Virus record (IMG/VR): IMGVR_UViG_3300049846_000628
Coordinates: 62,001 to 126,000 of that record
Length of the DNA: 64,000 bases
Reading direction: 5' to 3' (one strand)
The translations under genes were made by a program, and so were the position numbers. A model generated the notes under the pieces. It did no database searches. It saw only the letters and a program-made list of their open reading frames with translations, and was not told the origin of the DNA. Below, one piece after another: positions 36,859 through 55,700 of this stretch; positions within the stretch are counted from its first letter, which is position 1, and every line of letters begins with the position of its first letter.

Positions 36859-37656
36859 TTAAATATCAGTTTGTTGAGTTGGGCTATAAGTTCTTGAATC
36901 TCCAAAAGACATCCAATCTTCATCATATGTATAATTATCACCTGGATCTGCATCATATGGATTCGGTTGAACTGTATATCTCATTTCACGTTTAGCAGTT
37001 TGTCTATTTGTATCTGCATAAAGATCAACTTGAACCTTACGAATAAGACCTTCAGTTGTCTCTGCAATAGGACCAAACAGATAAGTCTTAGCAGTAAAGT
37101 TAAAAGTATATATCAAAATTCTTCTAGTGGAAAAATCTCCCTCATAATCATCAGTAAATGATACATTATCTAAAACAACAGGAACGTCTCTCTTTTCACC
37201 TATTGAATCAATAAGATCAATACTTATATTGAATGATGGTTGGAAATATGGTAAGATCTGTTCAACAACCTGTAATGCATCATCTTGAAGTTTAGACATT
37301 AAACTCAATTGAAATCCAATATTGTACGGAACTGGAAGAAAAACTTTTTTCAAATTAGAACCATCACATGCTCTAAAAGTTTGAGTAATATTTGCTTTTC
37401 TTGTTGGATCATATTGAATTGAATTCATTTCAAATGATAATCTAGGTAAAGTCATAGCAATTGGTTTATTTAACTCCGGTTGCTGCTCAATTCTAGCCAG
37501 AAATTTTTGAATAGGACCGTATGCTAGGGGAACTTTCATTTCACTAATACTATCACCAGAAGAATCTTTATGTCTGATGTAAATATCATTAAATAAAGTT
37601 CCAAAGGCAATAGTGGTCCTTCGGATAATTTCGTGATAGTGATAAGTTCCTAGCAT
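36859..37656 (-). CDS. gp15: Tail sheath stabilizer and completion protein
   Basis: AFGTLFNDI, VPLAYGPIQKFLAR, LPRLSFE and EQILPYFQP. Confidence 0.95.
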   Translation of the reverse strand: MLGTYHYHEIIRRTTIAFGTLFNDIYIRHKDSSGDSISEMKVPLAYGPIQKFLARIEQQPELNKPIAMTLPRLSFEMNSIQYDPTRKANITQTFRACDGSNLKKVFLPVPYNIGFQLSLMSKLQDDALQVVEQILPYFQPSFNISIDLIDSIGEKRDVPVVLDNVSFTDDYEGDFSTRRILIYTFNFTAKTYLFGPIAETTEGLIRKVQVDLYADTNRQTAKREMRYTVQPNPYDADPGDNYTYDEDWMSFGDSRTYSPTQQTDI

Positions 37657-39047
37657 TAAAATATACCGAATGGATTGGACTCTGAGAAATCGATGATGCC
37701 GTCTGCTTCATTTTCGATTTCTATGTTTTCACTGTATTTATCATATTGGTCCCACTTATCATAAGATTGAACAGAATATGTTGCACTCGATGCAGTTCCA
37801 ACAATAAGTTCTCCAGGATAGAATCCGCGTCTAGCAACATCATCTACTAGAGAAACCTTAAGGACTTTAGTATCTTTATCCCAGGATTTAACACGACCTC
37901 TAATTCCTGAAGATGATCCAACAACTTCTTCATTAAATTTATATGTGCCTATACCACTAATGGTAGGTGGTGCCGCAATCGTAATTGTTGGTGCAACAGT
38001 ATATCCAGCGCCTGGATTTGTAATTCTAATCGAGCTAATTGTTTGTCCAGATCCAACAATAGCGATTCCAGTTGCAGTTTGACCTGTTCCAACAGATCCT
38101 ACAATACTTACAATTGGTGAATTAACATATCCAGATCCTCCTCCCGTTACATTAAATCTCACAATACCATTCAGTGCTGTTTCTATTGAACAAGTTGCAA
38201 TCGCACCCGTTCCACCACCACCAACTATTGAAATCGTAGGTACAACTGTGTATCCAACTCCTGCATTTGTTAAAAGGATAGATTGAATTGAATATACACC
38301 AGATTTAGATGTTGTAATAGCTACAGCAGAGGCATTTTGACCGCCTACAGGAGCTGAAGAAATTGCTACGGTGGGTGTTGATTTATAACCAGATCCATCG
38401 TTAGTTAAAAATATTTGACGGATGTATCCACTGCCTATGACCGCATTTGCTGTAGATGTTGATCCAGTCCCAATAAGTTGTAAAGTTGTTATATAACCCT
38501 GATCTTCAATTTGAGTATCAATTTCATCAATTGTCGTATCAATAACTTCATCTTCATATTCAAAAAGTTCGCATCTCAATTCATAAACATATAACTTACC
38601 CAATTGATAAAAATTAACTTCATGTTCAACAAATTTAACTTCAAAAAGTCTTTGTCCAAGTGGGAAATAAACTAAATCACCCTCTCTAGGTCTTGATGAC
38701 AGAACAATCTCATTATCATCATCATTTTCCAAAAAGGGAGATATAAAATCTTCAAATCTCTCTTTTGATAAAATGATACTAAGTTCATCTTTTAAACTAA
38801 CACCAAACTTAGTAAGAAGATCGCCTTGTCCAGTATAACCATCAAAATTATTAACGTATGCTTCAATAGCAAAGTTGTCGTCAAATTTTGATGACTGTAT
38901 TTCTTTAATTATAGTTTGTTTTCTTACAAATTTTCTTGGGATATAAATTACCTCAACTCCATAAATACGAAGTTGTTCATTTATCAACTCTTGAATGAGT
39001 CTCTGTTCATTAGGTGATCCTTGTAAGAAGAAGGGATTGAGAGCCAT
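37656..39047 (-). CDS. gp14: Neck protein with an inserted repeat region
   Basis: NPFFLQGS..EQRL, YIPR, PREGDLVYFP, FEVKFVE; four GxGY...P repeats inserted centrally. Confidence 0.92.
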   Translation of the reverse strand: MALNPFFLQGSPNEQRLIQELINEQLRIYGVEVIYIPRKFVRKQTIIKEIQSSKFDDNFAIEAYVNNFDGYTGQGDLLTKFGVSLKDELSIILSKERFEDFISPFLENDDDNEIVLSSRPREGDLVYFPLGQRLFEVKFVEHEVNFYQLGKLYVYELRCELFEYEDEVIDTTIDEIDTQIEDQGYITTLQLIGTGSTSTANAVIGSGYIRQIFLTNDGSGYKSTPTVAISSAPVGGQNASAVAITTSKSGVYSIQSILLTNAGVGYTVVPTISIVGGGGTGAIATCSIETALNGIVRFNVTGGGSGYVNSPIVSIVGSVGTGQTATGIAIVGSGQTISSIRITNPGAGYTVAPTITIAAPPTISGIGTYKFNEEVVGSSSGIRGRVKSWDKDTKVLKVSLVDDVARRGFYPGELIVGTASSATYSVQSYDKWDQYDKYSENIEIENEADGIIDFSESNPFGIF

Positions 39048-39889
39048 TATCCAATAAAATCGTAAGGTGGAAGTTCATAATCCATAGACATTCTTTGTCT
39101 AATGTTTTCTAATTCTCTTTCAGCATCCTCATAAATTTCTCTACCATTCAATTCAATACCGCCTGGTAGTTTAACGCCTCTAAATTTAATTAGATTTTGA
39201 CCCCATTGCCTCTTCATTAAGGCAGTCAAATATCTCTTAACAAAACTATCATTATAAACTTTTGTAAAATCATTTGGATCTAAAATCCTATAGCAATCTA
39301 TTACTAAAAATGTATCTTTTGCTTTTGATTGCCAGTCAATATCTAAGTATAGTCTATTCTGTCTTTTATTAAATCTAATTTGCTTATCTGTTGAGAGTAA
39401 AAAATCAATATCTTCAAGATATGTTTTTACCATTGAATATTGCAAAAGTTCTACAGAATTAAAATAATACAGATCATTTAAAAATAACTGATATTTAATA
39501 CTAAACATACCAGCAGATATAGAACTGGTGTCGAACTTAAATACTTTTTCTACACCAATAATTGAGTCTGGAACTTGAATGAAATTAGAGTTCTCATAAA
39601 AATTAAAAGACGTAGATCCAACACCACTGATATTAGTGGTTCCGGTCGTTGTTACAATTCCAACTCCATTAGTTCCTTTAGCACTTGCTCTGTTTAAATC
39701 AGATTCTGTAATTTTATATTTCAAATACATTCTTTCTACACCATCATAATGCCTCTCTTGAAAGAATTGTAGTGCATCATCAACTAGATCATCAATTTGG
39801 TCATCCGCCAAGTTAATTTCTAAAACTGGAGCACCTAGTCTTCTTAGACAATAATCTATCAATTCTTGTCTACTTGCTGGTTTAGACAT
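39047..39889 (-). CDS. gp13: Neck protein
   Basis: CLRRLGAPVLEIN, KRQWGQNLIKF and LPGGIELNG; start MSKP at 39889 (TGATG coupling). Confidence 0.95.
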   Translation of the reverse strand: MSKPASRQELIDYCLRRLGAPVLEINLADDQIDDLVDDALQFFQERHYDGVERMYLKYKITESDLNRASAKGTNGVGIVTTTGTTNISGVGSTSFNFYENSNFIQVPDSIIGVEKVFKFDTSSISAGMFSIKYQLFLNDLYYFNSVELLQYSMVKTYLEDIDFLLSTDKQIRFNKRQNRLYLDIDWQSKAKDTFLVIDCYRILDPNDFTKVYNDSFVKRYLTALMKRQWGQNLIKFRGVKLPGGIELNGREIYEDAERELENIRQRMSMDYELPPYDFIG

Positions 39890-40257
39890 CAGTAAAATCC
39901 TCCGTCGATGGCGTCTGACCAAGTTGGAACGCCTGAACTATTTGTTGAAATTATATAGTTAGTTTCTGATATAGATACTGCAGTAGTTCCAGTTGAAACT
40001 AGTTGATCATTTGAATCAAAATATGCAACACCATAAGATTGTGCAGATGGAATATATAATCCACCATCAATGTAAATATTACTTTTGAAAGTACTTACAC
40101 CTACAAAAGTAGATATTCCACTTACATTAAGTTGAGTTACTGATGCTATACCGCCTATTACATTTGTGGCATTTGCGGCAAATGCTGATCCACCTGAAAT
40201 TGCTGAAATTACCTTAACAGAATTCTGTTGCCCAACTCTTACTTTAATGTCGGACAT
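39889..40257 (-). CDS. Hypothetical structural protein
   Basis: 122 aa; fibre-like VSGISTFVGVSTF; coupled to gp13. Confidence 0.7.
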   Translation of the reverse strand: MSDIKVRVGQQNSVKVISAISGGSAFAANATNVIGGIASVTQLNVSGISTFVGVSTFKSNIYIDGGLYIPSAQSYGVAYFDSNDQLVSTGTTAVSISETNYIISTNSSGVPTWSDAIDGGFY

Positions 40258-40598
40258 TATCGGGTGACCCCTTCTCTTACAAGAACCATTCCTTCGATTA
40301 CTCTTGTTTTTTCACCACCCAAGTCAATGACTATATCATATACATATCTTCCTGGTTTTAAATTAGATGTTTGTGATGAAGACAATGATATAGTAATTTT
40401 TCCTAATGTTTCTGGAGGTATGATGTTAGAAGTAAAAGTAGTTCCAGTAGAACTTCCTGCATATTTTCTCATCTGAGCAGAAACTGTATATCCAGTTAAA
40501 TCAAGGGCTGAATTACTATCACTAGATTCTAAGTTAAAAGTTTGTGCAAAGTTTGCTCCAGCATTAATTACAATGTTATTAACATATACAGCTGCCAT
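40257..40598 (-). CDS. Hypothetical Ig-like/BppU-like structural protein
   Basis: 113 aa; DLTGYTVSAQMRK...PGRYVYDIV; late promoter upstream. Confidence 0.7.
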   Translation of the reverse strand: MAAVYVNNIVINAGANFAQTFNLESSDSNSALDLTGYTVSAQMRKYAGSSTGTTFTSNIIPPETLGKITISLSSSQTSNLKPGRYVYDIVIDLGGEKTRVIEGMVLVREGVTR

Positions 40599-40620
40599 TT
40601 ATTTTATGAGATCTACTTCT

Positions 40621-40628
40621 TATTTATA
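40621..40628 (-). promoter_or_regulatory. T4-type late promoter TATAAATA
   Basis: Exact consensus upstream of the 113-aa ORF and neck genes. Confidence 0.75.
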
Positions 40629-40800
40629 TTTCAATTGAACCTAGAGAATTAATAACCTCTTGCTGCTTTAAATATAATTTACAATATAATTTTGAAAACT
40701 CTTTGAGTTCATCATGACTTAGTTCATCAATAACCCTTGAATGTTTTTCAAATTCAAACATTTTATCAATAGACTCAAGTTCAATTTCATTTGGATTCAT
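40624..40800 (-). CDS. 58-aa NblA-like protein (not in ORF track)
   Basis: Hand translation MNPNEIELESIDKMFEFEKHSRVIDELSHDELKEFSKLYCKLYLKQQEVINSLGSIEI*. The F-x12-SHD-x2-K-[DE]-F spacing matches the recalled Nostoc NblA sequence. The ORF is likely real; the NblA call is less certain. Confidence 0.55.
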   Translation of the reverse strand: MNPNEIELESIDKMFEFEKHSRVIDELSHDELKEFSKLYCKLYLKQQEVINSLGSIEI

Positions 40801-40987
40801 TAATTAACTCCCTAAGTAAAAATTTAATTTCATCAATATCTTTTTTCATTTGATCTAATTCTCTTTTTTGAGAATCTCTATGATGTAAACTATTTACATA
40901 TTGATTATAAGAGTGAACATCGCAATTTACAATTGCACCTGTAGTTTCATCCCGATATAAATTGGGGTGTCCTTTAACTGGAATCAT
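40787..40987 (-). CDS. Small hypothetical protein with a C-terminal coiled coil
   Basis: 66 aa; ATGA overlap with the 2398-aa gene. Confidence 0.75.
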   Translation of the reverse strand: MIPVKGHPNLYRDETTGAIVNCDVHSYNQYVNSLHHRDSQKRELDQMKKDIDEIKFLLRELINESK

Positions 40988-43900
40988 CTGATAGCAATAC
41001 TCCTTAAATCTTTGAATCTTGGTGCGTATGCTTGATTAGTTCCAGACATTACGATTTTGATCGTGTATCCAGTAAACTCTCCAAGATTATTAGCAGTAAA
41101 GTCATACTCTAAGAATTGATTTTCCAAACTTGCAGGTACGAATGTATCTGGTAATCCACTATTATTAGCAGGATTGATCACATCAGGGTAACCATCTTGA
41201 TTTGCATCAATGGTGAGATTGTTATAACCAGGGAATAGTTCAAATGCTTGCTCAACTTCACTAGAGTCTGGTCTAATGAGACTGTAAAGAACTCTAAAGT
41301 CTGCTGATGCGTGTCTGTATGCACCTATGATCACTTTAAGAGTGGTTGCAGGTTGAGACAGTCTCACAGTGTTAGAGACGTATACTGCAGCGTGTGGATC
41401 GTCAATAAGTGAGTTAACTCTGTTATCTAAAATGTAATTTGAAACAGGGCTATTTAGTCTGCTGCTAAGAAGTTGTGCTGAACAATTCTTCCAGAAAATC
41501 ATTGGAGACAGATTGTTATCTGTCGTTGATAGATTTATCTTTGCAGTGAATGATTTATTTCTAAGCAGACCTCCAAGATAAGTTTGCTCATTAATGTTTG
41601 AACAAATAATTCTAGTTGAAGAAAGTTTATTTTCAACTCCAATCTCAACATCTTCATATCCTTGATCTTGGAAAGATACTTCCGAACCATCTACACTTGT
41701 TCCACTTACTGAGCGAATTTGTGCAGAAATTTCAGTCGCTGCTCCAGGGACTAGGGAAAGAATTTCTGGAATAATGTTATCATATTGAATATTTTCAGTA
41801 GATTGAACATTATTTCCACCACCAGCATATTCTGCATTAAATGATAGTTGTGGAGATGAAGCAAGACTTCCATCTGAACTTCTATTTATTGAATTTGAAT
41901 CAAAGTTTGATCTATCAAATTCAATATAGTAACTATCAATATCATTACCAGTATCACTAATATCGTGAGTCTTATTGATTCTTCTTAGAGAAACGCCACT
42001 TAATTCGTACTTATAAACAGTAGAACCTGATGGATGATCTAAGATGAGAGTAGAATCAACTCCTCTTGTAATTGTTGTTAACTGACCAACTCCAATGCTC
42101 TCATACTTTATGATTTCATTTTCAATCTTAATATAACCAGGATTAGAAGCACTAACTGCTACACCCTCAAAAGTTGTAAAGTTTGAAGTTGAAGCTACGC
42201 TAACTGAAGTTCCTGATGGTGAAAGTAATGCAGATAATGATGTTGGTGGAACATTAGATTCTACATCATATAAGGTTACCTTATTATTCGCGGCATACAT
42301 TCCGTGATCAAAATGATTTACCTTCATAAAGTTTCCATCATAAATTCCACCCACAGCAGTTGAGGACAGGATAGAAGTGCCTGCAACAGATATTGCAGTA
42401 CCATTATCATAATAAACTAATGTAGAAACTCCTACTGTAGTGAATGATGCTGCTTGAACATTTGAAAGATATAAAGTATCTACGCCGGTAATTCCTGTAA
42501 TGGTTATTCTAGCGTCATTTCCAGATGCTGGTGAAATATCAGATGTCTTAATTCCAACAACATCACCTACTGCATATCCATTACCACGAATGGTTGGTGT
42601 TACAGCAGTTATCACTCCATTGGTTGCAGTTACATTAAGTTTCAGTCCAGAACCACTACCAGAGATAGCATAAGTTCCTACATTTGAAGTTGTAGTGTAG
42701 TTTGTTCCACCAGTTGTAATCCCAACAGTAGCAACTGAACTTCCAGTTCCAACAATGTAACCATAATTATATGGTTTGATGACTTCTCCAACTTTTCTTC
42801 CAGTTGTGAGAATCCCAATCATATTACTATCAGTTGTAGTTGTTATACCAACAGCAAATCTTCTAGGTAATGTTGTGATTGGATTATTTGGAAGAGTTGG
42901 AACATATCCATTGCTCTGATTAAGAGTTGGATTGTGGAAAAGAACGCTTCCAGATGATGCTGTGAAGTCTGCTTTATACAGTTTGAATTTGAGATCTTGA
43001 TACTGATTTGCTGTCCAGATAGAACCGTTTTGTGACTTGAATAGACTTCCTATAGCAAATTGTCTTGTATAACGAACACTTTCGGCATCAGGTAGTGTTG
43101 CAGTATTTACAGTTCTTTCACCCATTTCTGCAATCCAAACTTCATATTTGTCGGATTGTGGTGCTAGAAGCACAATAGCATATTCTAATCCTGGAGCAAG
43201 ATAGATTGGATAATCAAATGTTACTTTAGTTGCTACAGTTGCATCTCTAGAAGTTTGAATTTGCTCTGGTTTTAAAGTAACTGGATTTCCAATAACAGTT
43301 CTAGTTGGAGTGCCTAGTTCAACAGTTCTAACTTCAACCGTTAATGGTGCATTGTTTGGATCCTTGCTAGCAAAATAGATATCAACAGCAGTCAAATATG
43401 CACCATTGGAATCATCATTTGGTGAATTTCCATTTGTATCTTCCAGACTACCACCCACTGAGAATGATTGTGCTAAAGGATCAACAAAGTAAATGTTAGT
43501 TGATGATGTAACTATTCTTTGTCTGGTTTCCCACCTTCCTTCTGCCTTATAAACTGTTTCTGCAGATGAAATTAAATTACTACCTGGTAGAGGAATTTGA
43601 TTAGTTGCACTTGAAGTTAGTTTATAAACTTTAGAACCAGTTGCAATTCTTACTGGAGGTGCTGGATTTGTATTAGGATCTCTTAAGAAGAATGCACCCT
43701 GAAGATCACCATAATTATCAGAAATCAATCTTACATCTTTTACATAAGCAATAGCTCCACTTGTGGAACCAACTAACTTCATACCAGTAACAACGTATCC
43801 AGAGTATAGACCTTGTGCTTCCTCACACAATGAATCAATATCAACGTTTAAAACCTTGGAGGTTGCACTATATGATGCTGGAATACTTTCACTCTTAACA

Positions 43901-46900
43901 TATGGGTTGATGTTATATGTTGATGATGGAGCACTAAATGGACCTTGCTTGTGATTTGGTGCAGCAACTCTGAACTGTATAAGTGGGGTGAATAAACCAG
44001 ACGCTGATGAAATCCATCCAGTAACTGTTTCACCTACAGAGAATGCTTTTGATGCTCCATAATTCTGTAGAGATGAATCGGTAGCAATTTCAATTAATTT
44101 TGGAACGAAATCAACTTGACTATTTCCATCCAAGAATTGATATATTCTTGTGAGTGGTTTTAAGTTAACTGCATTAAATGCGGTATTACGAGATCTCATA
44201 AAGAGTTCTGTGCCGCTAGCTAACAGTCTATCTTCAACACTAGTTCTGGTTTCAGATCCAACAATTGCCCAACGTCCAGTTGCTCTTAACCATACCCAGT
44301 TGGTTTGGTTGATATTTACATCATTAAGTCTGATGGTTCTTACCCAACTATCACTTGCTGGATTGAGTTTAACAGTTCCACTATAAGAAACAACGTGGAA
44401 TGGGTTAACATTTTCTACTTTGGTTGCTAGTGGTTGTTCAATCCATCCAATTGAATCATATTTTAATGTGATTACATCATTTGTTTTTTGTACATTAGGG
44501 TCATACAGTGCAAAGTTAGTGCTTAAATCTAATGTCTCATTTGTAAATGCTTGTGCAGATACAGGTAACAAATTAATACTATTTCTACTAATCTGAGGTC
44601 TTAATTCTGAATTTTCAGTATCTACCTCTACAGAAGAAGCTAAAACATTAATCAGATCAGTATTTTTAAAGTCATCAACGAAAAATCCTGTCTTAAATCT
44701 ATTAAATCCTTGAGCGTCTTGAACTTGAAGAGTTTGTGTATTAAGTTCAAGAAGAGATAGTGAAGTAACTCTTTCTAGATTTTCTACTCTATCTTCAATT
44801 AATCCAATATCACGCATCGTGTATCTTCTGTTATCTGCAAGAGAAACAGAAGCATCTTTTGGATTGTAAAGATATGGTGGAAGAGTGATAGTAGCAATCT
44901 CCATCACATCATCTGGTTTTGATGGTGCTTTTGGATCTATTGATGGAGTTCCTTGTAAAACTATAAAGTTACCTAACTTGTTAAGATATAGTTTATCAAT
45001 TCTTCCTAGATAATAACTATATCCGACCAGAGCACCTTCATTTGGTGAAAGAATTAGTTTTGGTTCTGTTCCAAAAGTTCTTGATGCAAAATCAAATGGT
45101 GAAGAAGTTGTTGATGTAAATGGTGCTACTCTTGGTCTGAAATCTAATGTGTCTGATGCTCTTTGATTATTTGCACCGATATTTGGAATATCCGACCCGT
45201 ATCTTTCAGCAGAATAACTATTAACGGTGAAGACATCTCCAGTATCACCAGAAGGTACTTCATAGTAATCAAATACTACCAACATTCTTCTTGTTGGTGC
45301 AGATTCTCCTGCGTTTCTTACAAGTCTTGAGTAATCGTAATATTGGTCCTTCTGACCCTTCTCAAGTCTAAACTTGCTTGTGATATTTTGATAGCTACCT
45401 GCGGTTATTGACTGTAACTGTGTAGTAATGTTAGATTCTTCAAATTTAATATTTTCTCCAGCAGTAAATCTGTTAGTGTTAAGATATACTATACCTAAAG
45501 TATTTGCTGATGGTTTTGATACAACTCTAGCAATCGCTTTGCTGGTTTCACCTAAAATATTCTCACCAATAATTGCGTTCGTATCAACATTAGAGATAGA
45601 ACTAAAAGTTAGAGTATCTAAAGATGGATTTGAGGTACTTAAAGATTCATAAACTGCTATGACGTTAGCAACGTCTGGATAGTTTAGAGAAATTTCTTCA
45701 TCTTGAACTCTCAGTCCGTAGAATTGATTATAGGATAATCCGTCATTAATTGACGTGCTTATTCCAGTTCCAGACTCTGGATATTTTGAATATACTACAC
45801 TAACAGTCTTGCTGCGGTTATATTGCTTTAGTTTGCTTTGAACATCACTCTTAACGAATGTTGCATTAATTGCTGCAATATTTTTATTTTGAATGTTTGA
45901 GAATATTACTTGATTATTTGAGATAGTTACTTTATCAGAAGTTAAATTCTCAGTAGTTCCATCAAAGTAATGGATAGAATATCTCTCTTCATCAAAAGGT
46001 TGGAATCTAGCTAAGGATGAAGTTATTCCAAGATCAAAGTTTCCTGTATTGACTGTAAGTGTGTTACTAGATGGAGTTAATACAGAATTAGACTGTGCGG
46101 TAAATGTTAATAAGGAATCGCTTAAATCTGTTGTAGAGATATTTGAATTTGGTAGTTGAGCATAAAGATATCCTTTATCCTCATTCCTAATCTTTGGTAC
46201 ACCAATTGAGAATGTAGTTGTTGTTTGTGATGTTGGAAGACCACCATGACATATTCCAGTTACGGAACTTACTCCAACAAGAGTCATTCTTGTTCCATCA
46301 GCAGATACTGATGCAACTCTGTTGTAGGTTTCCGTATTAAATCCTACTCTCTGGTATCTAATAATTGTATCTGAAGAAATACCTGAGAATGCTTTACCAG
46401 ATGCAGAAACTGAACCATTAGATTCAATTGTTATTATATCAGTTGGTGAAAATCCAAAGGCAGTTGCTTTATCTAATTGAGTATCTGCAACAAAAGCTGT
46501 TGAGAATCCAGAAACTGAGGTTGGTTGAAAAACAGACTTAATATCACTAGATGAGTATGTTCTAATTGACTTAATGGATCTTGGATATAGTTCCAAACCA
46601 TTAATTAAAATTTGCTCACCAACAATAAAAGTTCCAGAAGTTTGACGGATAGAAATAGTATCCGATCCAGAACCTGCAGAAGTTACATATCCACTTGCAC
46701 CGGTGCTTTTTCCTTTTACAAGGGAAGTTGCTGGAAGTTGTGCTGCAGAAACTCCTTGATTTAAAACTAATTCTGTGTATGTCTGGATATCATAAAGGTA
46801 TAAATCCCAGTTTGTAGATCCTCCAGTATACGCTGCATCAGTTACATTGAAAGAATATACTCTTGCATCTCCAATTTTTGTACCAGTTGTTGAGGTTGCA

Positions 46901-48180
46901 GATGCTTTTCTCTGATTGTAGAATTCAACAGATGCTTTTAATTTTGGTGCGCCAGAAATGTTGTTAATTCTAACCAGATTACCCATCTCAAATGGGATAT
47001 TTACATCAGATACAGATTGTGTAGTTCTTGGCTTGGGAACATCTACAATTTCTATACCTGTCTTTTCAATATCATAACCTCTAACATAAGCTTTTCCTGG
47101 TGAAAACTTAATGCACATTAAGTCATCTGATGGTGTATTTCCCTGCTCTGTTTTTTCATTGCTAAAATAAACACCATCATTTCCAAGTCTATTATTCAGA
47201 GAATTATTTAAAGAGAACTCAAATGGATCTACTACATAATCTCCAGACTCATCATAAGTTCTCTGAGCCAGATAATCTCTTATAACGGAATATTGTGACT
47301 TGTTTTCAACTTTCTTTATGCTTCCATCTTGAACTCTTAAAAGTTCTATGAAATTAGTATCAGTGGCGATATCAGTTAAAAGTTTTTTCTCTAAAACTAG
47401 AGAAATTTTAAATCTATCAGCACCAGGTGCAGCATAGTTTGTAAATCCTTTTGCATTATCATACAGTGATGGATCATCTTTCGCTGTAATAATTTGCTCA
47501 TCAACTCTCAAACCAACTCTGTATGATGGAGTATTGGTATAATAGTCTAATACGATTGTTTGCTTTGGAACTCTTACAAAGGTTCCTCTTACAAAATATA
47601 CTCCTTCCCCAATTGATGCAGCAGATCCTGTTGCTGTTGCACCATTTGTAATAGCCGTTGCAAAAGTAGTTCCTGCAGTTATAACATTTCCATTGTACTC
47701 TACGTTTTCACTAGCACTCAGTGCTTCTCCATCTTGGAACTCACTAAAAGTAAAGTCATTGTTAGAGTCTTGATACTTTACATATATTGTTGTATACTCT
47801 ACGTCCGAATTTGGGAGTTGAACTAATTGGATAGTGGCGGTTACCCCAGAAATGCTCCCTGTAATTTTTTTACCAACAAAATTATTAATATAATCAGAAA
47901 TATTAACACCAAATGCCGTTGGGTTTAACTTAACTGCATAAAATTGACCATCATAAACAATATTTCCGGGGATCACCATTGACCCCTCTTTGAATATATG
48001 ACTACCGAAGGATTCAACTTGATCCTGGAGTATTGACTGTAAAGTGTTTAGTTCCCTTGCTTGTACAGGTCTTCCAGGATTGAATAATACTTTATAATAG
48101 TTTTTATCTTTTGCGCCAATACCAGGCTCATTAAAATCATCATAATAAGGACTTACATTAAGATTAGTTTTCTGAGCCAT
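40984..48180 (-). CDS. Large virion structural protein (VrlC/DUF4815-like)
   Basis: N-terminus NLNVSPYYDDF...YKVLFNPGRPVQARELNTLQSILQ; RFKTGFFVDDF; DPLAQSF; follows gp8. Confidence 0.85.
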   Translation of the reverse strand: MAQKTNLNVSPYYDDFNEPGIGAKDKNYYKVLFNPGRPVQARELNTLQSILQDQVESFGSHIFKEGSMVIPGNIVYDGQFYAVKLNPTAFGVNISDYINNFVGKKITGSISGVTATIQLVQLPNSDVEYTTIYVKYQDSNNDFTFSEFQDGEALSASENVEYNGNVITAGTTFATAITNGATATGSAASIGEGVYFVRGTFVRVPKQTIVLDYYTNTPSYRVGLRVDEQIITAKDDPSLYDNAKGFTNYAAPGADRFKISLVLEKKLLTDIATDTNFIELLRVQDGSIKKVENKSQYSVIRDYLAQRTYDESGDYVVDPFEFSLNNSLNNRLGNDGVYFSNEKTEQGNTPSDDLMCIKFSPGKAYVRGYDIEKTGIEIVDVPKPRTTQSVSDVNIPFEMGNLVRINNISGAPKLKASVEFYNQRKASATSTTGTKIGDARVYSFNVTDAAYTGGSTNWDLYLYDIQTYTELVLNQGVSAAQLPATSLVKGKSTGASGYVTSAGSGSDTISIRQTSGTFIVGEQILINGLELYPRSIKSIRTYSSSDIKSVFQPTSVSGFSTAFVADTQLDKATAFGFSPTDIITIESNGSVSASGKAFSGISSDTIIRYQRVGFNTETYNRVASVSADGTRMTLVGVSSVTGICHGGLPTSQTTTTFSIGVPKIRNEDKGYLYAQLPNSNISTTDLSDSLLTFTAQSNSVLTPSSNTLTVNTGNFDLGITSSLARFQPFDEERYSIHYFDGTTENLTSDKVTISNNQVIFSNIQNKNIAAINATFVKSDVQSKLKQYNRSKTVSVVYSKYPESGTGISTSINDGLSYNQFYGLRVQDEEISLNYPDVANVIAVYESLSTSNPSLDTLTFSSISNVDTNAIIGENILGETSKAIARVVSKPSANTLGIVYLNTNRFTAGENIKFEESNITTQLQSITAGSYQNITSKFRLEKGQKDQYYDYSRLVRNAGESAPTRRMLVVFDYYEVPSGDTGDVFTVNSYSAERYGSDIPNIGANNQRASDTLDFRPRVAPFTSTTSSPFDFASRTFGTEPKLILSPNEGALVGYSYYLGRIDKLYLNKLGNFIVLQGTPSIDPKAPSKPDDVMEIATITLPPYLYNPKDASVSLADNRRYTMRDIGLIEDRVENLERVTSLSLLELNTQTLQVQDAQGFNRFKTGFFVDDFKNTDLINVLASSVEVDTENSELRPQISRNSINLLPVSAQAFTNETLDLSTNFALYDPNVQKTNDVITLKYDSIGWIEQPLATKVENVNPFHVVSYSGTVKLNPASDSWVRTIRLNDVNINQTNWVWLRATGRWAIVGSETRTSVEDRLLASGTELFMRSRNTAFNAVNLKPLTRIYQFLDGNSQVDFVPKLIEIATDSSLQNYGASKAFSVGETVTGWISSASGLFTPLIQFRVAAPNHKQGPFSAPSSTYNINPYVKSESIPASYSATSKVLNVDIDSLCEEAQGLYSGYVVTGMKLVGSTSGAIAYVKDVRLISDNYGDLQGAFFLRDPNTNPAPPVRIATGSKVYKLTSSATNQIPLPGSNLISSAETVYKAEGRWETRQRIVTSSTNIYFVDPLAQSFSVGGSLEDTNGNSPNDDSNGAYLTAVDIYFASKDPNNAPLTVEVRTVELGTPTRTVIGNPVTLKPEQIQTSRDATVATKVTFDYPIYLAPGLEYAIVLLAPQSDKYEVWIAEMGERTVNTATLPDAESVRYTRQFAIGSLFKSQNGSIWTANQYQDLKFKLYKADFTASSGSVLFHNPTLNQSNGYVPTLPNNPITTLPRRFAVGITTTTDSNMIGILTTGRKVGEVIKPYNYGYIVGTGSSVATVGITTGGTNYTTTSNVGTYAISGSGSGLKLNVTATNGVITAVTPTIRGNGYAVGDVVGIKTSDISPASGNDARITITGITGVDTLYLSNVQAASFTTVGVSTLVYYDNGTAISVAGTSILSSTAVGGIYDGNFMKVNHFDHGMYAANNKVTLYDVESNVPPTSLSALLSPSGTSVSVASTSNFTTFEGVAVSASNPGYIKIENEIIKYESIGVGQLTTITRGVDSTLILDHPSGSTVYKYELSGVSLRRINKTHDISDTGNDIDSYYIEFDRSNFDSNSINRSSDGSLASSPQLSFNAEYAGGGNNVQSTENIQYDNIIPEILSLVPGAATEISAQIRSVSGTSVDGSEVSFQDQGYEDVEIGVENKLSSTRIICSNINEQTYLGGLLRNKSFTAKINLSTTDNNLSPMIFWKNCSAQLLSSRLNSPVSNYILDNRVNSLIDDPHAAVYVSNTVRLSQPATTLKVIIGAYRHASADFRVLYSLIRPDSSEVEQAFELFPGYNNLTIDANQDGYPDVINPANNSGLPDTFVPASLENQFLEYDFTANNLGEFTGYTIKIVMSGTNQAYAPRFKDLRSIAIR

Positions 48181-48183
48181 TTT

Positions 48184-49743
48184 TTAAAATTCCAGGATAA
48201 TTTTAACGTCTTCTTTTTGTCTAGAACTTCTTGTTACCGTGGGTCTATTATCAATATAAATTATATCCCCTGACTTATTATTTATCTCAGGATTGGAAAG
48301 TCCATTTGTAAATTCAACTCCAAGGTTTATAATTTTATTTGAAATTGTTGTAGTAATTCCTGAGAAAGAACTATCAACGGATGCATTGAATCCACCACCA
48401 ACTTTAACAATCTGATTTACATTATTAAAATCTAAAACCTTTCCTGTGGTCGTCAAACCAATGTAGTCTGTTTGATCGTATGAGTTTGGATTAAAATATA
48501 ATGATCTGTCTCTATAATATTTCAGAACTTTTGTTTCAGAATCATATGATGCTACATATCCAACTGCTATTCCAGTAGGTAATGTTTGTTGAATTTTGTC
48601 CCCTACAGAAATTGTTCCTGAAGGAGTTCCACTAAGTTTTAATGCATAAGTCGCTGAGAATTCACTAGATGTAAAGTTTGTTGTGTTTATTCCAGTGGAG
48701 TCAAAAACTTTTGGATTCTTTAAAATTCCAACTTGAGCAAACTTACTATCAATTGGGAAATCCTTAGTTGAATCATCAAACCTAGCATAAATTAAAATTT
48801 TATCAGCGCCTAATTCTTTGTAAATATCAAATCCGTGACCCTTTGATGGGGGAATAATTGGGATAAGTTTTGCATACTGTCCAGGAGTCGTTGTGGTTCC
48901 TAGATCAACCATAGCATAAGTATAATTTTTTCCACCAGAAGTGACTGTAGCATCAGTAATACTACCTGAGGAATTAACTTCAATAGAAACGGTAGCGTCA
49001 GAACCATCCCCAATAATATTGCAAGATTGTCCAGACTGTAGAGTATATCCAGAACCTCTGGACTGAATATAAACTTTCTTTATCTGGTTATCATTTAAGG
49101 TAGAGTCTCCATTTTCCCTAACTGCTACAATTTGGGAATCCGCAGATGTACTCCAATTATTAGGAACTGTAATATATTCAATAGAATCAAATTTTATAAT
49201 ATCGCTTGGGGAAATGGTGTATAAGTATTTCCAGATATATCCATCTCCACTCTCTCCAGCAGGTGCTGGTTCTAAATCAGTAAAAGTTGGCTCATCTTGC
49301 GATGCATTTCCAGTTGTATTGATTCCAGACGATCCATTATCAATACAAATATAGACTCTATAGTCTGAGTTTACAACATAATAATTTGCATCATATAGTC
49401 TCATAGAACCAGTTATAGGCGATGGATTTACCACGCTATAATCTGGTCTATACATTTCATATTTTGTTCCTTTAACCCAGTCAATTCTTTTAACTACTCT
49501 TCTAATATTTGCACTTGTAATTTTTTTACCAAAAAGAACCGTGGATTCGTAGTGATTCAAATAATCAATGTTATCGGTTGGATTTGGTGGAGTAATATTC
49601 CAATTAGAATCTCTACCGAATCCAACAGCGGTTGGGTTTGATAATCCAACAAAAACATAATATGAATTTGAAGAATCCTGAACAGAGTCTACAAAATTAG
49701 ACGCATTTAAAATTCTAAACTGATCTGTTACAAGTGCAGACAT
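48184..49743 (-). CDS. gp8: Baseplate wedge subunit
   Basis: KKITSANIRRVVKRIDW, RVYICIDNG, DGYIWKYLYTI and PSKGHGFDIYKELGA. Confidence 0.92.
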   Translation of the reverse strand: MSALVTDQFRILNASNFVDSVQDSSNSYYVFVGLSNPTAVGFGRDSNWNITPPNPTDNIDYLNHYESTVLFGKKITSANIRRVVKRIDWVKGTKYEMYRPDYSVVNPSPITGSMRLYDANYYVVNSDYRVYICIDNGSSGINTTGNASQDEPTFTDLEPAPAGESGDGYIWKYLYTISPSDIIKFDSIEYITVPNNWSTSADSQIVAVRENGDSTLNDNQIKKVYIQSRGSGYTLQSGQSCNIIGDGSDATVSIEVNSSGSITDATVTSGGKNYTYAMVDLGTTTTPGQYAKLIPIIPPSKGHGFDIYKELGADKILIYARFDDSTKDFPIDSKFAQVGILKNPKVFDSTGINTTNFTSSEFSATYALKLSGTPSGTISVGDKIQQTLPTGIAVGYVASYDSETKVLKYYRDRSLYFNPNSYDQTDYIGLTTTGKVLDFNNVNQIVKVGGGFNASVDSSFSGITTTISNKIINLGVEFTNGLSNPEINNKSGDIIYIDNRPTVTRSSRQKEDVKIILEF

Positions 49744-49762: not shown

Positions 49763-49770
49763 TATTTATA
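49763..49770 (-). promoter_or_regulatory. T4-type late promoter TATAAATA
   Basis: Exact consensus upstream of gp8. Confidence 0.75.
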
Positions 49771-49775: not shown

Positions 49776-52700
49776 TCACAAAGTCTTTTTAATCGGTCCA
49801 ATATCTCTCAATCCATATCCTCTTCTCTGTACCGTTGGGAACGTTGATAGTCCAGCGTCAACGTTGTAAGCAGACACTGCTATGGATATTGGGGAGGATG
49901 ATCTAGAGAATCCAGATAATTTACCCCAAGAGAATTTACCAACAGATGAACCTGTTGTGGCGATTCCGACTATGGATGTTGTAGATTGTACATTACAAGT
50001 AATAATACCAACCGATGCGTTAAATGCATTAATATAGTAAATGTTATCTAAGAATGTTGTTCCTACACCCACCTTAGCGGAATCTGTATTAACAATTGAA
50101 GTAACTCCATTTCCAACAAATGTATCAAAAACATAAATTGGTTGATTGACCGAAAGATTTGTAAATGGTGATAGAGATGGATCTAGAGTGAATTTAATAG
50201 CCAGATTAGTTCCGATTCCAACCGTAGTTGCAATTCCAACAACGTTTCCAGAGAATCCTTGTACAGTAGTTACATTAGAAATGTTTTCGTATGTTGGATC
50301 TGGTAATGGAACTAAAACTTGTGGTACTATACCTGCAGTGTATCCAAAACCAGGATTTGTAATTGATACTGTTGATAGTGATCCATTTACGATACTTATG
50401 GTTGCAGTTGCCGTTGTCCCAATTCCAACACCAATTGATGGTGGTGCTGAAATACTTACGGTTACGGCAGATCCTATATATCCACTACCAGGATTATTAA
50501 TTGTTAGTGATGAAATTGTTCCAGCAACAGAAACTGTTGCAGTTACAGCGGCAGATACTGGATCTGGTGCTCCAGATATTATAATCGCATTGAAATTAAT
50601 GCTTCCTGGGGATACATTTTCATAGTTAAAGAATTCTGCATTATCAACATAAATTGAACTATCTGAAGAAGTAATATTACCAATAATTTTTGCAGTGGGA
50701 TAGATCTGTGGTTCTATAGAATCTCTTGCTTTGGAAACTATTCCACCGTCAATTATCTTATCAACTTTTTGCTTAGTCCAACTTAATGGTTTTTCATTTA
50801 CAGTATCAATTCCTTGTAATATATAAAGATTTGTTTGAATCTTATCAGACGAAGGAATGTTACTAATTACTCTTGAATTTTGAGTAGTTGTAGATTGTAA
50901 GAGAGCGTTATTGCTATAGACCTGAACATCATCTCCAATCTTTAAAGTCTCATTTACATCTCTAAAAGAACTATCTAAAGAACTTCCTCTATAGAAGAAG
51001 ATTGCAACATCATCTTCTGGTTTTGGAGCTTCAGTAAATGTAAATGATGTTCCACCAGTGAACTGGTAGGCAACTTTTGGTTCTTGGATGACTCCATTGA
51101 CGAAAATGATCAGTAGAGCATCAAAATCAATTAATTGTGAATCTGGATCTGATGAATTTTTCTCAAAACTGAGAAGTTGAGAATTGTAGAATAGTGGGAA
51201 TCTTGTTCTAGAACCATCTTGATAGTCCTTAACAGAGTCAATATAGTCTAATTCCCCAAACTGCCATGCAGCAAATGAATCTGTAAATGTATCTAAAACT
51301 GTTAACTGGAATTGTGATACTGGAGATGGTAATCCAAAATCAGTAACGAGTCCAACTGGAGTGATTACATCACCTTTCTTAAATCCATATCCAGACCTTG
51401 TTACACTGAATCCAGTGACTTCAAATAATGTAGATCCAACACCAACTGTAGAACTTGCACCAACTTCAACATTGAGGAGTAAACCAACACCAGTATCAGT
51501 TGTTGCACCAACACCCAGTCTTGAAACTCCAATTACAGGAAGATTTTCATAATTTGGAGAAGAAATATTGATAGTTGGATTTACATATCCAGAACCACCG
51601 CCAACAATATTAAATGCTAGGGTTCCGCCAGCACCAACTATAGCACTAATAGTAGCTGCTGTTCCAGTGTGACCAGATTCAGTAATGGCGATTGAAACTG
51701 GATTTCTATATCCAGATCCATAATTTCCAGTAGAACCTATACCAATGGAAACAATACTTCCACCAGCACCAACAATTGCAGTAACTGACGCTCCAACTAG
51801 GGGAGCATATCCAACACCTGTGGTAGAACCTAGGGATATAATAACTCCACCTCTTGGGAGTTGGTTCATATTTACATCAGATTGTGAAATAATTACAGAT
51901 CCATTAGTAGATGTAATTCCTGAGAAAACAATACTACTGATTCCCAAATTAGTATTTTCAACAATACTATAATTGTTACTTAGATTGTTCTGTGTAGTTG
52001 GAGTTTGGAATACTCCATTTATAAACACTATACCGTTTCCACCAGTTGTTCCAAATCCAACAGTGCTTATGCCCTGAGAGGATAATGTATATGTTTGACC
52101 TATACCTGTAAATCTTTCGGAAATATCGTCAAATATTTGATTAGTAGTATAGTCTTTTCTTAGGAAAACTCTTCCGTTGAAAGATGATCTTGCTTCAGAA
52201 AGATTGTCAACATCAGGACCCAATTGATCTTCAATAATCCCCTGTGGTGGATTTGTAAAGAATATTTGATTCCCTGCAATGTTGAAAGAACCACGGTAAA
52301 CATTTACCGCCGATGCATCTGTGTGAGAAGTTGCAGATGATCCTACAAAACCTCTCTGTACTTGAACAAGAGGAACTGATCCACTGAATGAAATTGGTCC
52401 TAATGTGGTTGTTCCCAATCCAACATTATTTACTTTCATATACTCATTATCAATTTTAATAAGATCATTAACATTAATTGAACTTATTCCACTTAAAGCA
52501 AAGATAGTAGTTGCTGCTCCGATAGGAGCTTTATTATTCAATGTTGTGTTAATTAATGAATATGAGATTGGATATTGAACAACATTATCAAGTGTGATTA
52601 TTGATTTTTCATTTTTCTTAACCATCTCCAGTTGATGTGCATTACCTTCACCTAGGCTAGTGAAAGTTACGCATATTCCAGCAGTAGCATATTCTTTTCT

Positions 52701-55700
52701 AGTGGATAACTTGAATACATCATTATTAACTTTATATGCAAAAACTGTAGTTGGTAGTCTATCAGTAACAACACCAACCGAATTCAAGGTGGATCCAATT
52801 CCAACAGAAGTTGCACCAACACCTAAGAATGTAGATGTTGGTCTATAGATTAATTCCTCCCCAGTATTAAAGAAGTGATTTTCAATAGAGAACTCACCAG
52901 TTGCTGGATTTAGGACAGTAGAGTCTGTTGGATCAAACTCTTTCATAAAAATTGGATACCCTTGATATCTCAAATCAAAATTAAGTCTGTTTAGATTATC
53001 ACTATTCAAACCATAGTAATTTGCAGTGTGAACTGAATTTATTATGCTTGCATACTCTAAATCATTAGGTTGATTGATTTCATCGGTAACTGTATAGAAT
53101 TTTTCATTGAAGGAAAGAATTTCAAAAGATCCAGAAATATTTGTGTCTGGATAGAATATTAAACTTGCGGTTGAACCAGAAATACTTCCACCAAATGATC
53201 CAATTCCTGATGTGCTTCCAATGGATAAGAAAGGATATTGTACAGTATAAGTGTCTATATCATCGACAATCATCATTACCTGATGTAAAGCACTTGTTTG
53301 TCCAATACTCACTCTTACAACAGATTTCACTGATGCAAATAAAGTTGTATCTAATGAAACTACAGTTGACGCTGAAGATACTGTTGAGAAGTTGGATAAG
53401 TAATTAACAGTTCCCTCAAATCCATCAATTTGTCCAGTTTTCTTAAATCTATAAGTTCCTATTCCAGATCCTGTAGTGTTAAATCCAATATTCTTACTTC
53501 TAACAATAATATCATTAGAGGATGTATTGGTATAATTCAGAGTTAGTATTCCTCCGGAGATTGAAGCTCCGAAAGAACCTATAAAGGTTCCACTATATTC
53601 ACTATTAGAATCAAAATAAAATTCACTTATGTTAGTGTCTGTTCCATTATGGTCAACATACAACTCAACATAATTCATTTCATTGGTTGTGTTATTTAAA
53701 ATATGAACCTGAGAATGTAATGTTTCAAACTTCGAAACACTTTTTGAAATCAATGATGTTGTTATTCCTGGAGAAACAATCGCATTAGATCCAATAAGAT
53801 CAACAAATCCTACAGAGTAAGTTCCAATTCCAGAGAAGAAAGTTGAGAAATTATCAGATAATATTTTAATTTTATAATCTGTGTTATATGGATCATAAGG
53901 AGTAAATTTCAGATTAAATTCGCCATAGGAATCAACGTAACCTTCAACATCTCCTATCTTAGTATCTAAGTTACTTATGCTTCCTTTTTCTAACGTATAA
54001 ACATCATCCTCATCATTAATAACTACCAATTCAGTCAATTGAATCTGACTATAATCAGAACTGGTAATTTGTACAATAAAGAGGTTATATCTATCTGATT
54101 TGTCTATAGATAAAACATTAGCAAATGTTTCAACATTTCCTTCAGAACTAGAAAACTCAGCACTAATATCATCAATAGCAAGAACACGATTTGTTCTACA
54201 CTCAATATAATCTGCTAGTTTTTTATTTTTAAGTTTTAAGAACCGTGATGTTGATCCAACAGTATCAATATCAACAACTAAATCAAAATTGTTAATAGTA
54301 TCTACTCTATTTTCATCTATAATATCATATAAAATTGTAGTAGACTCTGAAGCAGCAGTAGATCCAACACCAACACTTTGGGTAATTGTTGTGTCTGCAA
54401 AATTCTTAAGTCCAATTGGGTGTAAAATGCTGTTAACTGGGCTAACAATATCAACCCACTCTTGATTGCTTCTTACAGAGTAAGAAAGGTTTTGATAATA
54501 ATCATTGTCTGGAATTACTTGACTATCCTCATCCAGTTTTCCTATATCATCTGACCAACCAATATCTTGTCTTGATCCATAATCAATTCCAAAGTTACCA
54601 GTATTTGTTTGTACACTGTTAATAGTAGCAATGTTTCCAGATTGAACTCCACGAACAACTTGTCCTGCAGAAATCTTATAATCTCCAGAAACTTTAATAT
54701 AATTCTCATTATCTTGTACTACTTTGAGATCTTGGATCTCAAATCCAGTTTCATTTCTAACCGATAACGTTTCTCCAACAATGAAAGGAGAGTATGTTTG
54801 AGTAACTTCAAATTGAGGATAATCTTTATAGTTAACTATGAAGCTGGAAGCGTCTTGAACTGTTTTAGCAATACCAATGTTTGTGGAAAGACCAGAAAGA
54901 CTGTACTCTAGTTTTCTTGGAAGCAGAGTTCCTCCGTTCTCATAAGTAATAACAGTAAAGAATCTATATCCATAGTTGTCGGAATTAAATCCATCACCAT
55001 CATTACTATACTTCTGAACACCCTCTACATAAATTCTGTCTCCAACTGAAAATGGTTCTGTTCCGAATCCACTTAGAGGAGTTACAAGATAGCAAGTAAC
55101 TATTCCAGAAGATGAAGATGTTATGGTATTAATACCAACCCCATTTGTATTATTGATAGCTCTAATTGTAACTGGAGTTGATGGGAGACCTTTTGGTTCC
55201 TGATCAATATCTACCGAAATGATAGAAGTTCCAGAAAGATTTGCAACTAGTAAACCAGAATCAATTCTGGATCCAGTCTCACTATCTACAACAATTAAAT
55301 TAGGAGCACTAACATAATTTTTTCCATTATTAGTTACTTCAATTTCTGAAATAGTATTAGAATTCTTTATAGTAAGTAGAGATGCTATTGAAGCAGCTGG
55401 TCTCAAAGTTTTATCTGATGGATACTCAAATCCCTCATTTACGATTCTTATTTGATTTATTTTTCCAATAGATTCTGACTTCGCAACTACATAAGCGCCT
55501 CTTCCATTGATGGAATCTGTTCCCACAAATGATGGAATTTTTTTGAAATTCACACCAGGTGATATAGTCCTGATCTTAGAAATTCCTCCAGAAGCAGTGC
55601 GAGAGGTAGTCTTATATTTGAGAATATCACAATCTGAGTAATTATAAGTTAAGTTCTCTGGTAATTGTTGTAGAGAAATTACAAATGTGGTTGTTCCTAC

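What the first reader, a model, noticed from the sequence alone, without database searches (positions are those of the whole stretch)
40624..40800. Hidden NblA-like gene inside the structural module
Seen: a 58-aa ORF below the track cutoff, overlapping the upstream ORF by 14 nt. Against Nostoc NblA as I recall it (IELSLEQQFSIRSFATQVQNMSHDQAKDFLVKLY), it aligns as IELESIDKMFEFEKHSRVIDELSHDELKEFSKLY, with identical F-x12-SHD-xx-K-[DE]-F spacing and a two-helix pattern. Established: NblA targets phycobilisomes for Clp degradation, and some cyanophages carry active nblA. Inference: a late-expressed antenna-dismantling factor that would also indicate a phycobilisome-bearing host; a position between baseplate and neck genes would be easy to overlook.
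Basis: partly seen in the sequence, partly recalled or inferred. Interest (0 to 1): 0.75.

Follow-up and report, generated by a model that had tools for sequence, protein, structure and literature searches.

The report
NblA-like gene in a freshwater cyanophage
A real, conserved 58-residue gene at the end of a baseplate operon of a freshwater T4-like cyanophage folds like NblA, the adaptor that marks the cyanobacterial light antenna for degradation, but its closest relatives in cultured phages were already predicted to be NblA in 2022.

Summary
The ORF exists exactly as described: window 40624-40800, minus strand, 58 aa, with a 14-nt overlap with the upstream ORF. It is a real gene. dN/dS is about 0.2, there is a GGAG Shine-Dalgarno 7 nt upstream, IMG/VR holds more than 459 relatives, and a 1.8-billion-protein library holds 127 clusters at 50% identity.

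The family is already in the literature. The syntenic S-SRM01 ortholog (78% identical) and the S-SM2 and Bellamy orthologs were reported as HHpred NblA homologs (96-97%) in 2022. S-SCSM1 and S-SCSM2R homologs are annotated NblA.

The gene is the last in a late unit (baseplate wedge, VrlC-like, 66-aa virion protein, then this ORF). A T4-type late promoter overlaps its stop codon. Late expression, phycobilisome targeting and Clp recruitment are inferred, not shown.

Verdict: a new member of a known, predicted kind, of modest interest.

The parts
40624..40800 (-). NblA-like ORF: 58 aa, ATG at 40800, TAA stop at 40626..40624; predicted helix 11-25, loop, helix 29-52
   Evidence: (phrog_27081, 2.4e-16)
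40808..40812 (-). Shine-Dalgarno GGGAG, 7 nt upstream of the ATG, lying inside the 3' end of the upstream ORF
   Evidence: a GGAG-type motif in 72 of 82 related loci
40621..40628 (-). T4-type late promoter TATAAATA overlapping the ORF's stop codon, 22 nt before the ATG of the next gene; marks the ORF as the last gene of its transcription unit
   Evidence: present at or just after the stop in 66 of 82 related loci
40787..40987 (-). 66-aa virion structural protein (phrog_473, 7.6e-20); its 3' end overlaps the NblA-like start by 14 nt
40984..48180 (-). 2398-aa VrlC-like giant structural protein (phrog_358); 4-nt overlap with the 66-aa ORF
48184..49743 (-). 519-aa baseplate wedge subunit (phrog_438, 8e-161), first gene of the unit
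49763..49770 (-). Nearest upstream exact TATAAATA late promoter, 20 nt before the baseplate wedge ATG; a GATAAATA also lies at 48279..48286
40257..40598 (-). Downstream 113-aa LtfC-like beta-sandwich protein (phrog_3304, 7e-34), served by the late promoter at 40621..40628
37656..39922 (-). Neck genes gp13 (39047..39922, phrog_211) and gp14 (37656..39047, Pfam T4_neck-protein, 1e-28)

Best explanation
The ORF encodes a diverged, phage-specific member of the NblA fold family: a roughly 6.8-kDa helix-loop-helix protein. By analogy with cyanobacterial and T7-like cyanophage NblA, it most likely dimerises, binds phycobiliproteins of the infected picocyanobacterium and hands them to the host ClpC-ClpP protease. 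That would strip the antenna and release amino acids while virion proteins are being made.

Shown here: it is a real gene under purifying selection; it has the NblA fold; it belongs to a large cyanomyovirus family whose members are annotated or predicted as NblA; and it sits as the last, translationally coupled gene of a baseplate operon bounded by T4-type late promoters.

Inferred: dimerisation, phycobilisome and ClpC binding, bleaching activity, and late timing.
For: Gene reality:
- dN/dS is about 0.2.
- The Shine-Dalgarno and the 14-nt overlap are conserved in about 90% of 82 related loci.
- There are 266 homologs at 90% clustering, more than 459 IMG/VR loci and 127 clusters at 50% identity.
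- The genome holds a single copy.

Fold:
- AlphaFold2 gives pLDDT 92.9 with two helices.
- In the ESM Atlas shape search, the first named full-length match is a cyanobacterial NblA/ycf18 cluster (TM 0.75/0.69, 53 residues, rmsd 2.0 Å).
- In the Atlas feature search, every named hit is NblA (22 of 100).

Sequence:
- hhalign of the family against 8 canonical NblAs gives P 0.0036. The score of 18.7 compares with 10.2 ± 2.4 for column shuffles (1 of 200 reach it) and 10.8 and 11.9 for reversed controls.
- phmmer lists 1OJH at E 0.33.
- With a canonical NblA HMM, the ORF ranks 3rd of 1946 ORFs in the genome.

Relatives and literature:
- tblastn gives 49% identity to S-SCSM2R 'NblA', 50% to the S-SCSM1 'phycobilisome degradation protein' and 78% to S-SRM01 QPX48163.1.
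- Published HHpred for QPX48163.1 against T. vulcanus NblA is 96.9%; S-SM2 gives 96.8% and Bellamy 97.3% (PMC9602691 Table S4).

Host:
- All 23 isolate records with a homolog are Synechococcus phages.
- The phage occurs in freshwater, river and estuary samples.
- It carries psbA and psbD.

Mechanism precedent:
- Deleting nblA in the T7-like phage S-TIP37 lengthens the latent period and lowers virion protein synthesis (PMC12695635).
Against: - No hit to Pfam PF04485 at E <= 10 for the ORF or for any of 63 diverse family members, nor in six-frame scans of this genome and of five related phages.
- Family profiles against PDB sequences do not retrieve NblA.
- Foldseek against PDB and AFDB clusters finds nothing.
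- hhalign probability is only 9%.
- No member of this cyanomyovirus family has been tested experimentally, and one marine phage NblA-like protein (G1b) failed to complement an nblA mutant (10.1101/494369).
- The genome carries no other phycobilisome gene: no cpeT and no bilin reductase.
- No cyanobacterial genome carries a close relative.
Confidence: 0.65

Rival explanations
1. It is an NblA-fold adaptor that has been retargeted. It still recruits the host Clp protease but directs it mainly to proteins other than phycobilisome subunits.
For: The phage family's most conserved surface (the K-L-Y-L-K-Q-Q-E stretch in helix 2 and F-E-Y-E-K in helix 1) differs from the canonical NblA consensus. The Pfam model does not recognise it. 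NblA of the T7-like phage S-TIP37 directs degradation of non-phycobilisome proteins too, and nblA occurs in phages of phycobilisome-less Prochlorococcus (PMC12695635).
Against: All cultured carriers of this family were isolated on phycobilisome-bearing Synechococcus, and none on Prochlorococcus. Phycobilisomes are by far the largest protein pool available.
Confidence: 0.15
2. It is a small helical-hairpin protein with a virion-related role, such as an assembly chaperone or a minor or internal virion protein for the neighbouring VrlC-like or tail-fibre-like proteins. Its resemblance to NblA would then be convergent.
For: It is translationally coupled to a 66-aa virion structural protein and sits between baseplate and neck genes in this phage and in S-SRM01, S-SM2 and Bellamy. 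HMM-level and Foldseek tests for NblA are negative. Helical hairpins are a common arrangement (note).
Against: In S-TIM5, S-SKS1, S-B43, DSL-LC03, S-SCSM1 and S-SCSM2R the homolog sits elsewhere, mostly among small non-structural genes, so it is not tied to these neighbours. All three NblA crystal structures fall in the top six of 48,161 chains with near-complete coverage. The family is confined to cyanophages.
Confidence: 0.12
3. It is not a gene but a chance open frame in AT-rich DNA between two real genes.
For: It is short (58 aa) and overlaps its neighbour. The window is 36% G+C.
Against: dN/dS is about 0.2 with synonymous divergence of 0.4-0.6. Hundreds of conserved homologs exist at several genomic positions. 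The Shine-Dalgarno is conserved. The fold prediction is confident.
Confidence: 0.01

Closest known systems
Cyanomyovirus NblA-like proteins: S-SRM01 QPX48163.1, S-SM2 YP_004322257.1, Bellamy YP_009791272.1, S-SCSM1 ORF237, S-SCSM2R ORF118, S-TIM5 gp189 (phrog_27081)
   Same: Clear sequence homologs: 78% identity to S-SRM01 and 38-50% to the others. Sizes are similar (54-67 aa; the S-SKS1 CDS is annotated longer, 137 aa). In S-SRM01, S-SM2 and Bellamy the gene order is the same (VrlC-like, small virion protein, this gene with a 14-nt overlap, LtfC-like, gp13, gp14). These proteins were predicted as NblA by HHpred at 96-97% (PMC9602691 Table S4).
   Different: This copy comes from an uncultured freshwater phage. 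None of the family has been tested experimentally.
Canonical cyanobacterial NblA/Ycf18 (Pfam PF04485; PDB 1OJH, 2Q8V, 3CS5)
   Same: About 60 aa with a helix-loop-helix fold that superposes at 1.5-1.6 Å over nearly the whole chain. The loop and the helix-2 N-cap sit at a similar position. There is weak profile-profile similarity.
   Different: About 20% identity, and no Pfam hit. The canonical L-S-L-E-Q-x-F and E-Q-A motifs are replaced by I-x-L-E-[ST]-x-x-K-x-F-E-Y-E-K and K-L-Y-L-K-Q-Q-E. The C-terminus is shorter. It is phage-encoded and placed in a structural operon instead of being induced by nutrient stress.
NblA of T7-like cyanophages (S-TIP37 type)
   Same: A phage-encoded small NblA that often overlaps the preceding gene. 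It has been shown to speed infection and drive phycobilisome degradation (PMC12695635).
   Different: tblastn with the ORF found homologs only in myovirus-type cyanophage records. The T7-like gene lies downstream of the exonuclease gene, outside the structural genes. The T7-like proteins are closer to canonical NblA.
NblA of freshwater Microcystis phages (Ma-LMM01, MaMV-DC)
   Same: A freshwater cyanophage NblA.
   Different: Those are recent host-derived copies that hit Pfam NblA strongly (1.1e-13) and sit next to nrdA. The present family is old and diverged, and no close relative was found in the cellular genome collection searched.

Membership tests
NblA/Ycf18 (Pfam PF04485) | Small protein of about 55-65 residues | tested here: met
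   58 aa; most family members are 54-70 aa
NblA/Ycf18 (Pfam PF04485) | Match to the Pfam NblA model at or above the gathering score (25 bits) | tested here: not met
   No hit at E <= 10 for the ORF or for 63 diverse relatives. No hit in six-frame scans of this genome or of five related phage genomes. Positive controls score 52-89 bits.
NblA/Ycf18 (Pfam PF04485) | Remote (profile-profile) homology to canonical NblA | tested here: inconclusive
   hhalign gives P 0.0036 and probability 9% with 38 aligned columns. The score is reached by 1 of 200 column shuffles and is above reversed controls. The template alignment was shallow (8 sequences). Published HHpred on the 78%-identical S-SRM01 ortholog gives 96.9%, E 0.025.
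NblA/Ycf18 (Pfam PF04485) | Helix-loop-helix fold superposable on NblA crystal structures | tested here: met
NblA/Ycf18 (Pfam PF04485) | Functional dimer forming an open four-helix bundle | tested here: inconclusive
   No multimer prediction was available. A natural tandem fusion of two units (P0127, 134 aa, on at least 4 contigs in phage context) exists. Its AF2 model shows four helices but only pLDDT 69 and pTM 0.57.
NblA/Ycf18 (Pfam PF04485) | Binds phycobiliproteins and ClpC; causes phycobilisome degradation (bleaching) | not testable with these tools
   Needs expression, complementation and pull-down experiments.
NblA/Ycf18 (Pfam PF04485) | Occurs in phycobilisome-bearing organisms or their viruses | tested here: met
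   All 23 isolate records with a homolog are Synechococcus phages. The phage carries psbA and psbD and is found in freshwater, river and estuary samples. This feature is not exclusive, because nblA also occurs in Prochlorococcus and its phages.
Cyanomyovirus NblA-like family (phrog_27081; S-SCSM1 ORF237 type) | Significant sequence similarity over the full length | tested here: met
   phrog_27081 at 2.4e-16; tblastn at 4e-23 to S-SRM01, 3e-9 to S-SCSM2R NblA and 3e-6 to S-SCSM1
Cyanomyovirus NblA-like family (phrog_27081; S-SCSM1 ORF237 type) | Shared gene order with the S-SRM01, S-SM2 and Bellamy subgroup | tested here: met
   a 14-nt overlap in 72 of 80 related loci

The most novel reading that the evidence does not exclude
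This phage-only NblA lineage may work differently from the nutrient-stress NblA. It is hard-wired to the end of a late baseplate operon and translationally coupled to a virion protein. It could therefore be made together with, or even packaged with, virion components. Its distinct conserved helix-2 surface may also direct host Clp to targets beyond the phycobilisome.
Probability: 0.12. Interest if true: 0.55.

Novelty: new member of a known kind. Interest (0 to 1): 0.27.

Why it matters
Viral NblA has recently been shown to speed infection and reduce light harvesting in marine Synechococcus, but only for T7-like phages. This ORF belongs to a separate family carried by T4-like cyanophages. The family is very common in freshwater and estuarine viromes: more than 459 IMG/VR contigs, and one DNA run where the contig covering this locus has depth of about 1,090. 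If the family is active, phage-driven antenna degradation extends to freshwater picocyanobacteria and to the other major cyanophage group. It would also have an unusual late-operon placement. The specific claim is not new, however. The orthologs were called NblA homologs in 2022, and what is missing is an experiment, not a prediction.

Tried and rejected
Searches that found no NblA:
- Pfam, NCBIfam and PDB sequence searches with the single protein and with family profiles gave no NblA hit beyond a phmmer E of 0.33.
- Six-frame PF04485 scans of this genome and of five related phages found nothing.
- Foldseek against PDB and AFDB clusters found nothing significant. The exhaustive VIA-align search was what found NblA.
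- A scan of 185,579 cellular genomes for the conserved KLYLKQQE stretch returned only four contigs, all in non-cyanobacterial MAGs and probably misbinned phage fragments. No cyanobacterial homolog turned up.

- Relatives of a virus record cannot be drawn, so I could not reach cyanobacterial genomes to build a deep NblA profile. I used eight NblAs from cyanobacterial plasmids and Ma-LMM01 instead, which limits hhalign sensitivity.

Inconclusive tests:
- Metatranscriptome contigs cover the locus (depth 47), but DNA carry-over cannot be excluded, so transcription is not shown.
- A sigma-70-like site at 40932..40904 inside the upstream ORF is not above chance for this AT-rich DNA and was not pursued.
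- Dines 2008, with the mutational data on NblA, was not held. Residue-level checks of binding positions were therefore not made.

Rejected reading:
- A chance ORF is rejected.

Full report
**Observation.** It overlaps the 3' end of a 66-aa ORF (40787..40987) by 14 nt. A GGGAG Shine-Dalgarno lies at 40812..40808, 7 nt before the ATG. The window is part of a 211,201-bp virus record with 37.7% G+C. It is a T4-like cyanomyovirus whose nearest cultured relative in this region is the freshwater Synechococcus phage S-SRM01.

On the minus strand the gene order is:
- a 3971-aa protein;
- an exact TATAAATA late promoter (49770..49763);
- the baseplate wedge gene (48184..49743, phrog_438);
- a 2398-aa VrlC-like protein (40984..48180);
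- the 66-aa virion protein (phrog_473);
- the 58-aa ORF;
- TATAAATA (40628..40621);
- an LtfC-like protein;
- a 122-aa protein;
- gp13 and gp14.

**It is a real gene.** A word-indexed search found 266 homologs, none of them with a Pfam domain. IMG/VR holds more than 459 encoding loci. An exhaustive HMM search of 1.8 billion representatives found 127 clusters at 50% identity. Against 23 relatives of equal length, median dN/dS is 0.20, with synonymous differences at 40-60% of sites. Across 82 related loci:
- the 14-nt overlap is kept in 72 of 80;
- a GGAG-type ribosome site is kept in 72 of 82;
- TATAAATA sits at or just after the stop codon in 66 of 82;
- no locus has TATAAATA within 160 nt upstream.

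The genome has one copy.

**NblA tests at sequence level.** These are mostly negative or weak.
- Pfam PF04485 gives no hit at E <= 10 for the ORF or for any of 63 diverse relatives.
- Six-frame scans of this genome and of S-SCSM2R, S-SCSM1, S-TIM5, S-SM2 and S-SKS1 find nothing.
- Genuine NblAs score 52-89 bits in the same test.
- Family profiles against PDB sequences do not retrieve NblA. The single sequence lists 1OJH at E 0.33.
- I built a canonical alignment from seven plasmid-borne NblAs of Nostoc and Acaryochloris plus Ma-LMM01 NblA.
- hhalign of the phage family against that alignment gives P 0.0036 and probability 9%, over 38 columns.
- The score of 18.7 compares with 10.2 ± 2.4 for 200 column-shuffled queries, of which one reaches it. 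Reversed profiles score 10.8 and 11.9.
- An HMM of the canonical set, run without filters over all 1946 ORFs of the genome, ranks this ORF third, at 6 bits.
- Family members score higher than their shuffles, but the effect is small and the members are not independent.

**NblA test at fold level.** This is positive. AlphaFold2 with a 63-sequence alignment gives pLDDT 92.9 and pTM 0.67, with helices 11-25 and 29-52. Foldseek finds nothing in PDB or AFDB clusters, which is common for short helical hairpins.

An exhaustive alignment of the model to 48,161 PDB representatives, independent of Foldseek, places the NblA structures at the top:

|---|---|---|---|---|---|
| 1 | 1ojh_A | Nostoc PCC 7120 | 6.5 | 1.5 Å | 51 of 52 (model 6-57 on chain 5-56) |
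| 2 | 2q8v_A | T. vulcanus | 5.9 | 3.3 Å | 52 of 53 |
| 6 | 3cs5_A | S. elongatus PCC 7942 | 5.0 | 1.6 Å | 47 of 48 |

**What is already known.** tblastn against 50,697 phage records finds homologs in 23 records, all of them Synechococcus phages. The S-SCSM2R copy is annotated NblA and the S-SCSM1 copy 'phycobilisome degradation protein'.

The S-SCSM1 paper (PMC9602691) predicted ORF237 as NblA by HHpred at 95.5%. Its Table S4 lists HHpred matches to T. vulcanus NblA for S-B43, S-B05, S-SM2 (96.8%), Bellamy (97.3%), S-SKS1, SynMITS9220M01 and S-SRM01 QPX48163.1 (96.9%, E 0.025).

QPX48163.1 is the 58-aa gene of S-SRM01 in the same position as here and is 78% identical. S-SM2 and Bellamy share the same gene order and overlap. 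In S-TIM5, S-SKS1, S-B43, DSL-LC03, S-SCSM1 and S-SCSM2R the homolog sits elsewhere, often among small non-structural genes. The family is therefore not tied to the structural module. According to that paper, S-TIM5 had been predicted to carry an nblA gene by Nadel et al. 2019. That study also notes that marine phage NblAs score poorly against the Pfam model. No member of this cyanomyovirus family has been tested experimentally in the papers I could read.

The recalled Nostoc string is exact and the F-x12-SHD-xx-K-[DE]-F spacing is real. hhalign uses the same register for helix 1: one extra residue in the phage protein after the I-x-L. The structural superposition and the flanking IEL and KLY identities use a register shifted by one.

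SHD is not conserved in the phage family, where those positions vary. Canonical NblAs mostly have S-x-E-Q-A there. The family's own conserved features are I-x-L at residues 6-8, F-E-[YF]-E-K at 15-19, and K-L-Y-L-K-Q-Q-E at 41-48.

**Expression and host.** All nine exact TATAAATA sites in the window are on the coding (minus) strand. One overlaps the ORF's stop codon and precedes the next gene by 22 nt. The nearest exact site upstream is at 49770..49763, before the baseplate wedge gene, and a GATAAATA lies at 48286..48279.

The ORF is thus the last gene of a tightly packed, overlapping late-type unit. That supports late co-expression with baseplate proteins but does not prove it. A sigma-70-like site inside the upstream ORF is not above chance. 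A freshwater metatranscriptome contains a 6.5-kb contig over the locus, but DNA carry-over cannot be excluded.

The phage occurs in freshwater, riverine and estuarine metagenomes. It carries psbA and psbD but no cpeT or bilin reductase. A phycobilisome-bearing picocyanobacterial host is therefore likely. NblA alone would not prove it, since nblA also occurs in Prochlorococcus and its phages (PMC12695635).

**Mechanism and verdict.** The best-supported reading is a diverged NblA-fold proteolysis adaptor. Its proposed role is to release amino acids from the antenna during virion protein synthesis. This fits the S-TIP37 result that loss of viral nblA cuts late protein production and lengthens the latent period.

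Confidence that it has the NblA fold and belongs to the predicted cyanomyovirus NblA family is about 0.85. Confidence that it actually drives phycobilisome degradation through Clp is about 0.65.

It is a new member of a known, already predicted kind. Interest is modest. The remaining value lies in the family's abundance in fresh water, its late-operon placement, and the lack of any experimental test.

Noticed in passing
P0127 (134 aa); locus L103:3001-3405: A natural tandem fusion of two NblA-like units in one ORF. It is seen on at least four contigs, in phage context (Peptidase_S74 tail fibre, HNH, peptide deformylase). This fits a protein that works as a dimer. Its AF2 model has four helices but low confidence (pLDDT 69).
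   Followed up: partly
P0177, P0161, P0167; S-SKS1 locus L006:2264-2677: Some relatives carry the NblA-like unit joined to an extra domain of about 70 aa, N- or C-terminal. The ESM Atlas labels a 137-aa cluster of this kind as T4 Y07B domain (PF27001). The local Pfam copy gives no hit.
   Followed up: partly
window, whole; e.g. 5207, 14699, 15601, 19367, 25565, 26952, 31483, 40621, 49763: All nine exact TATAAATA sites in the 64-kb window lie on the minus strand, the coding strand of the structural genes. The count itself (9 against 6.0 ± 2.2 expected) is not significant, but the strand bias is complete.
   Followed up: partly
loci L090-L093 (genome contigs): Four contigs binned into non-cyanobacterial MAGs (Lake Mendota Acetobacteraceae, Crocinitomicaceae and Pirellulaceae, and a Methanobacteriota MAG) encode this protein family. 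They are most likely misbinned cyanophage fragments.
   Followed up: no
window 49776-61691 and 40984-48180, minus strand: Two giant structural ORFs (3971 aa and 2398 aa, the latter VrlC-like, phrog_358) occupy nearly 19 kb of the window.
   Followed up: no
window 39889-40257, minus strand: A 122-aa ORF between the LtfC-like gene and gp13 matches short repeat segments of baseplate wedge proteins (phrog_13853, phrog_1469). In S-SRM01 the corresponding gene is longer (642 nt) and is annotated baseplate wedge subunit.
   Followed up: no
window 38000-43900 in run X1: In one freshwater DNA run the contig covering this locus has depth of about 1,090, so this phage was very abundant in that sample.
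   Followed up: no
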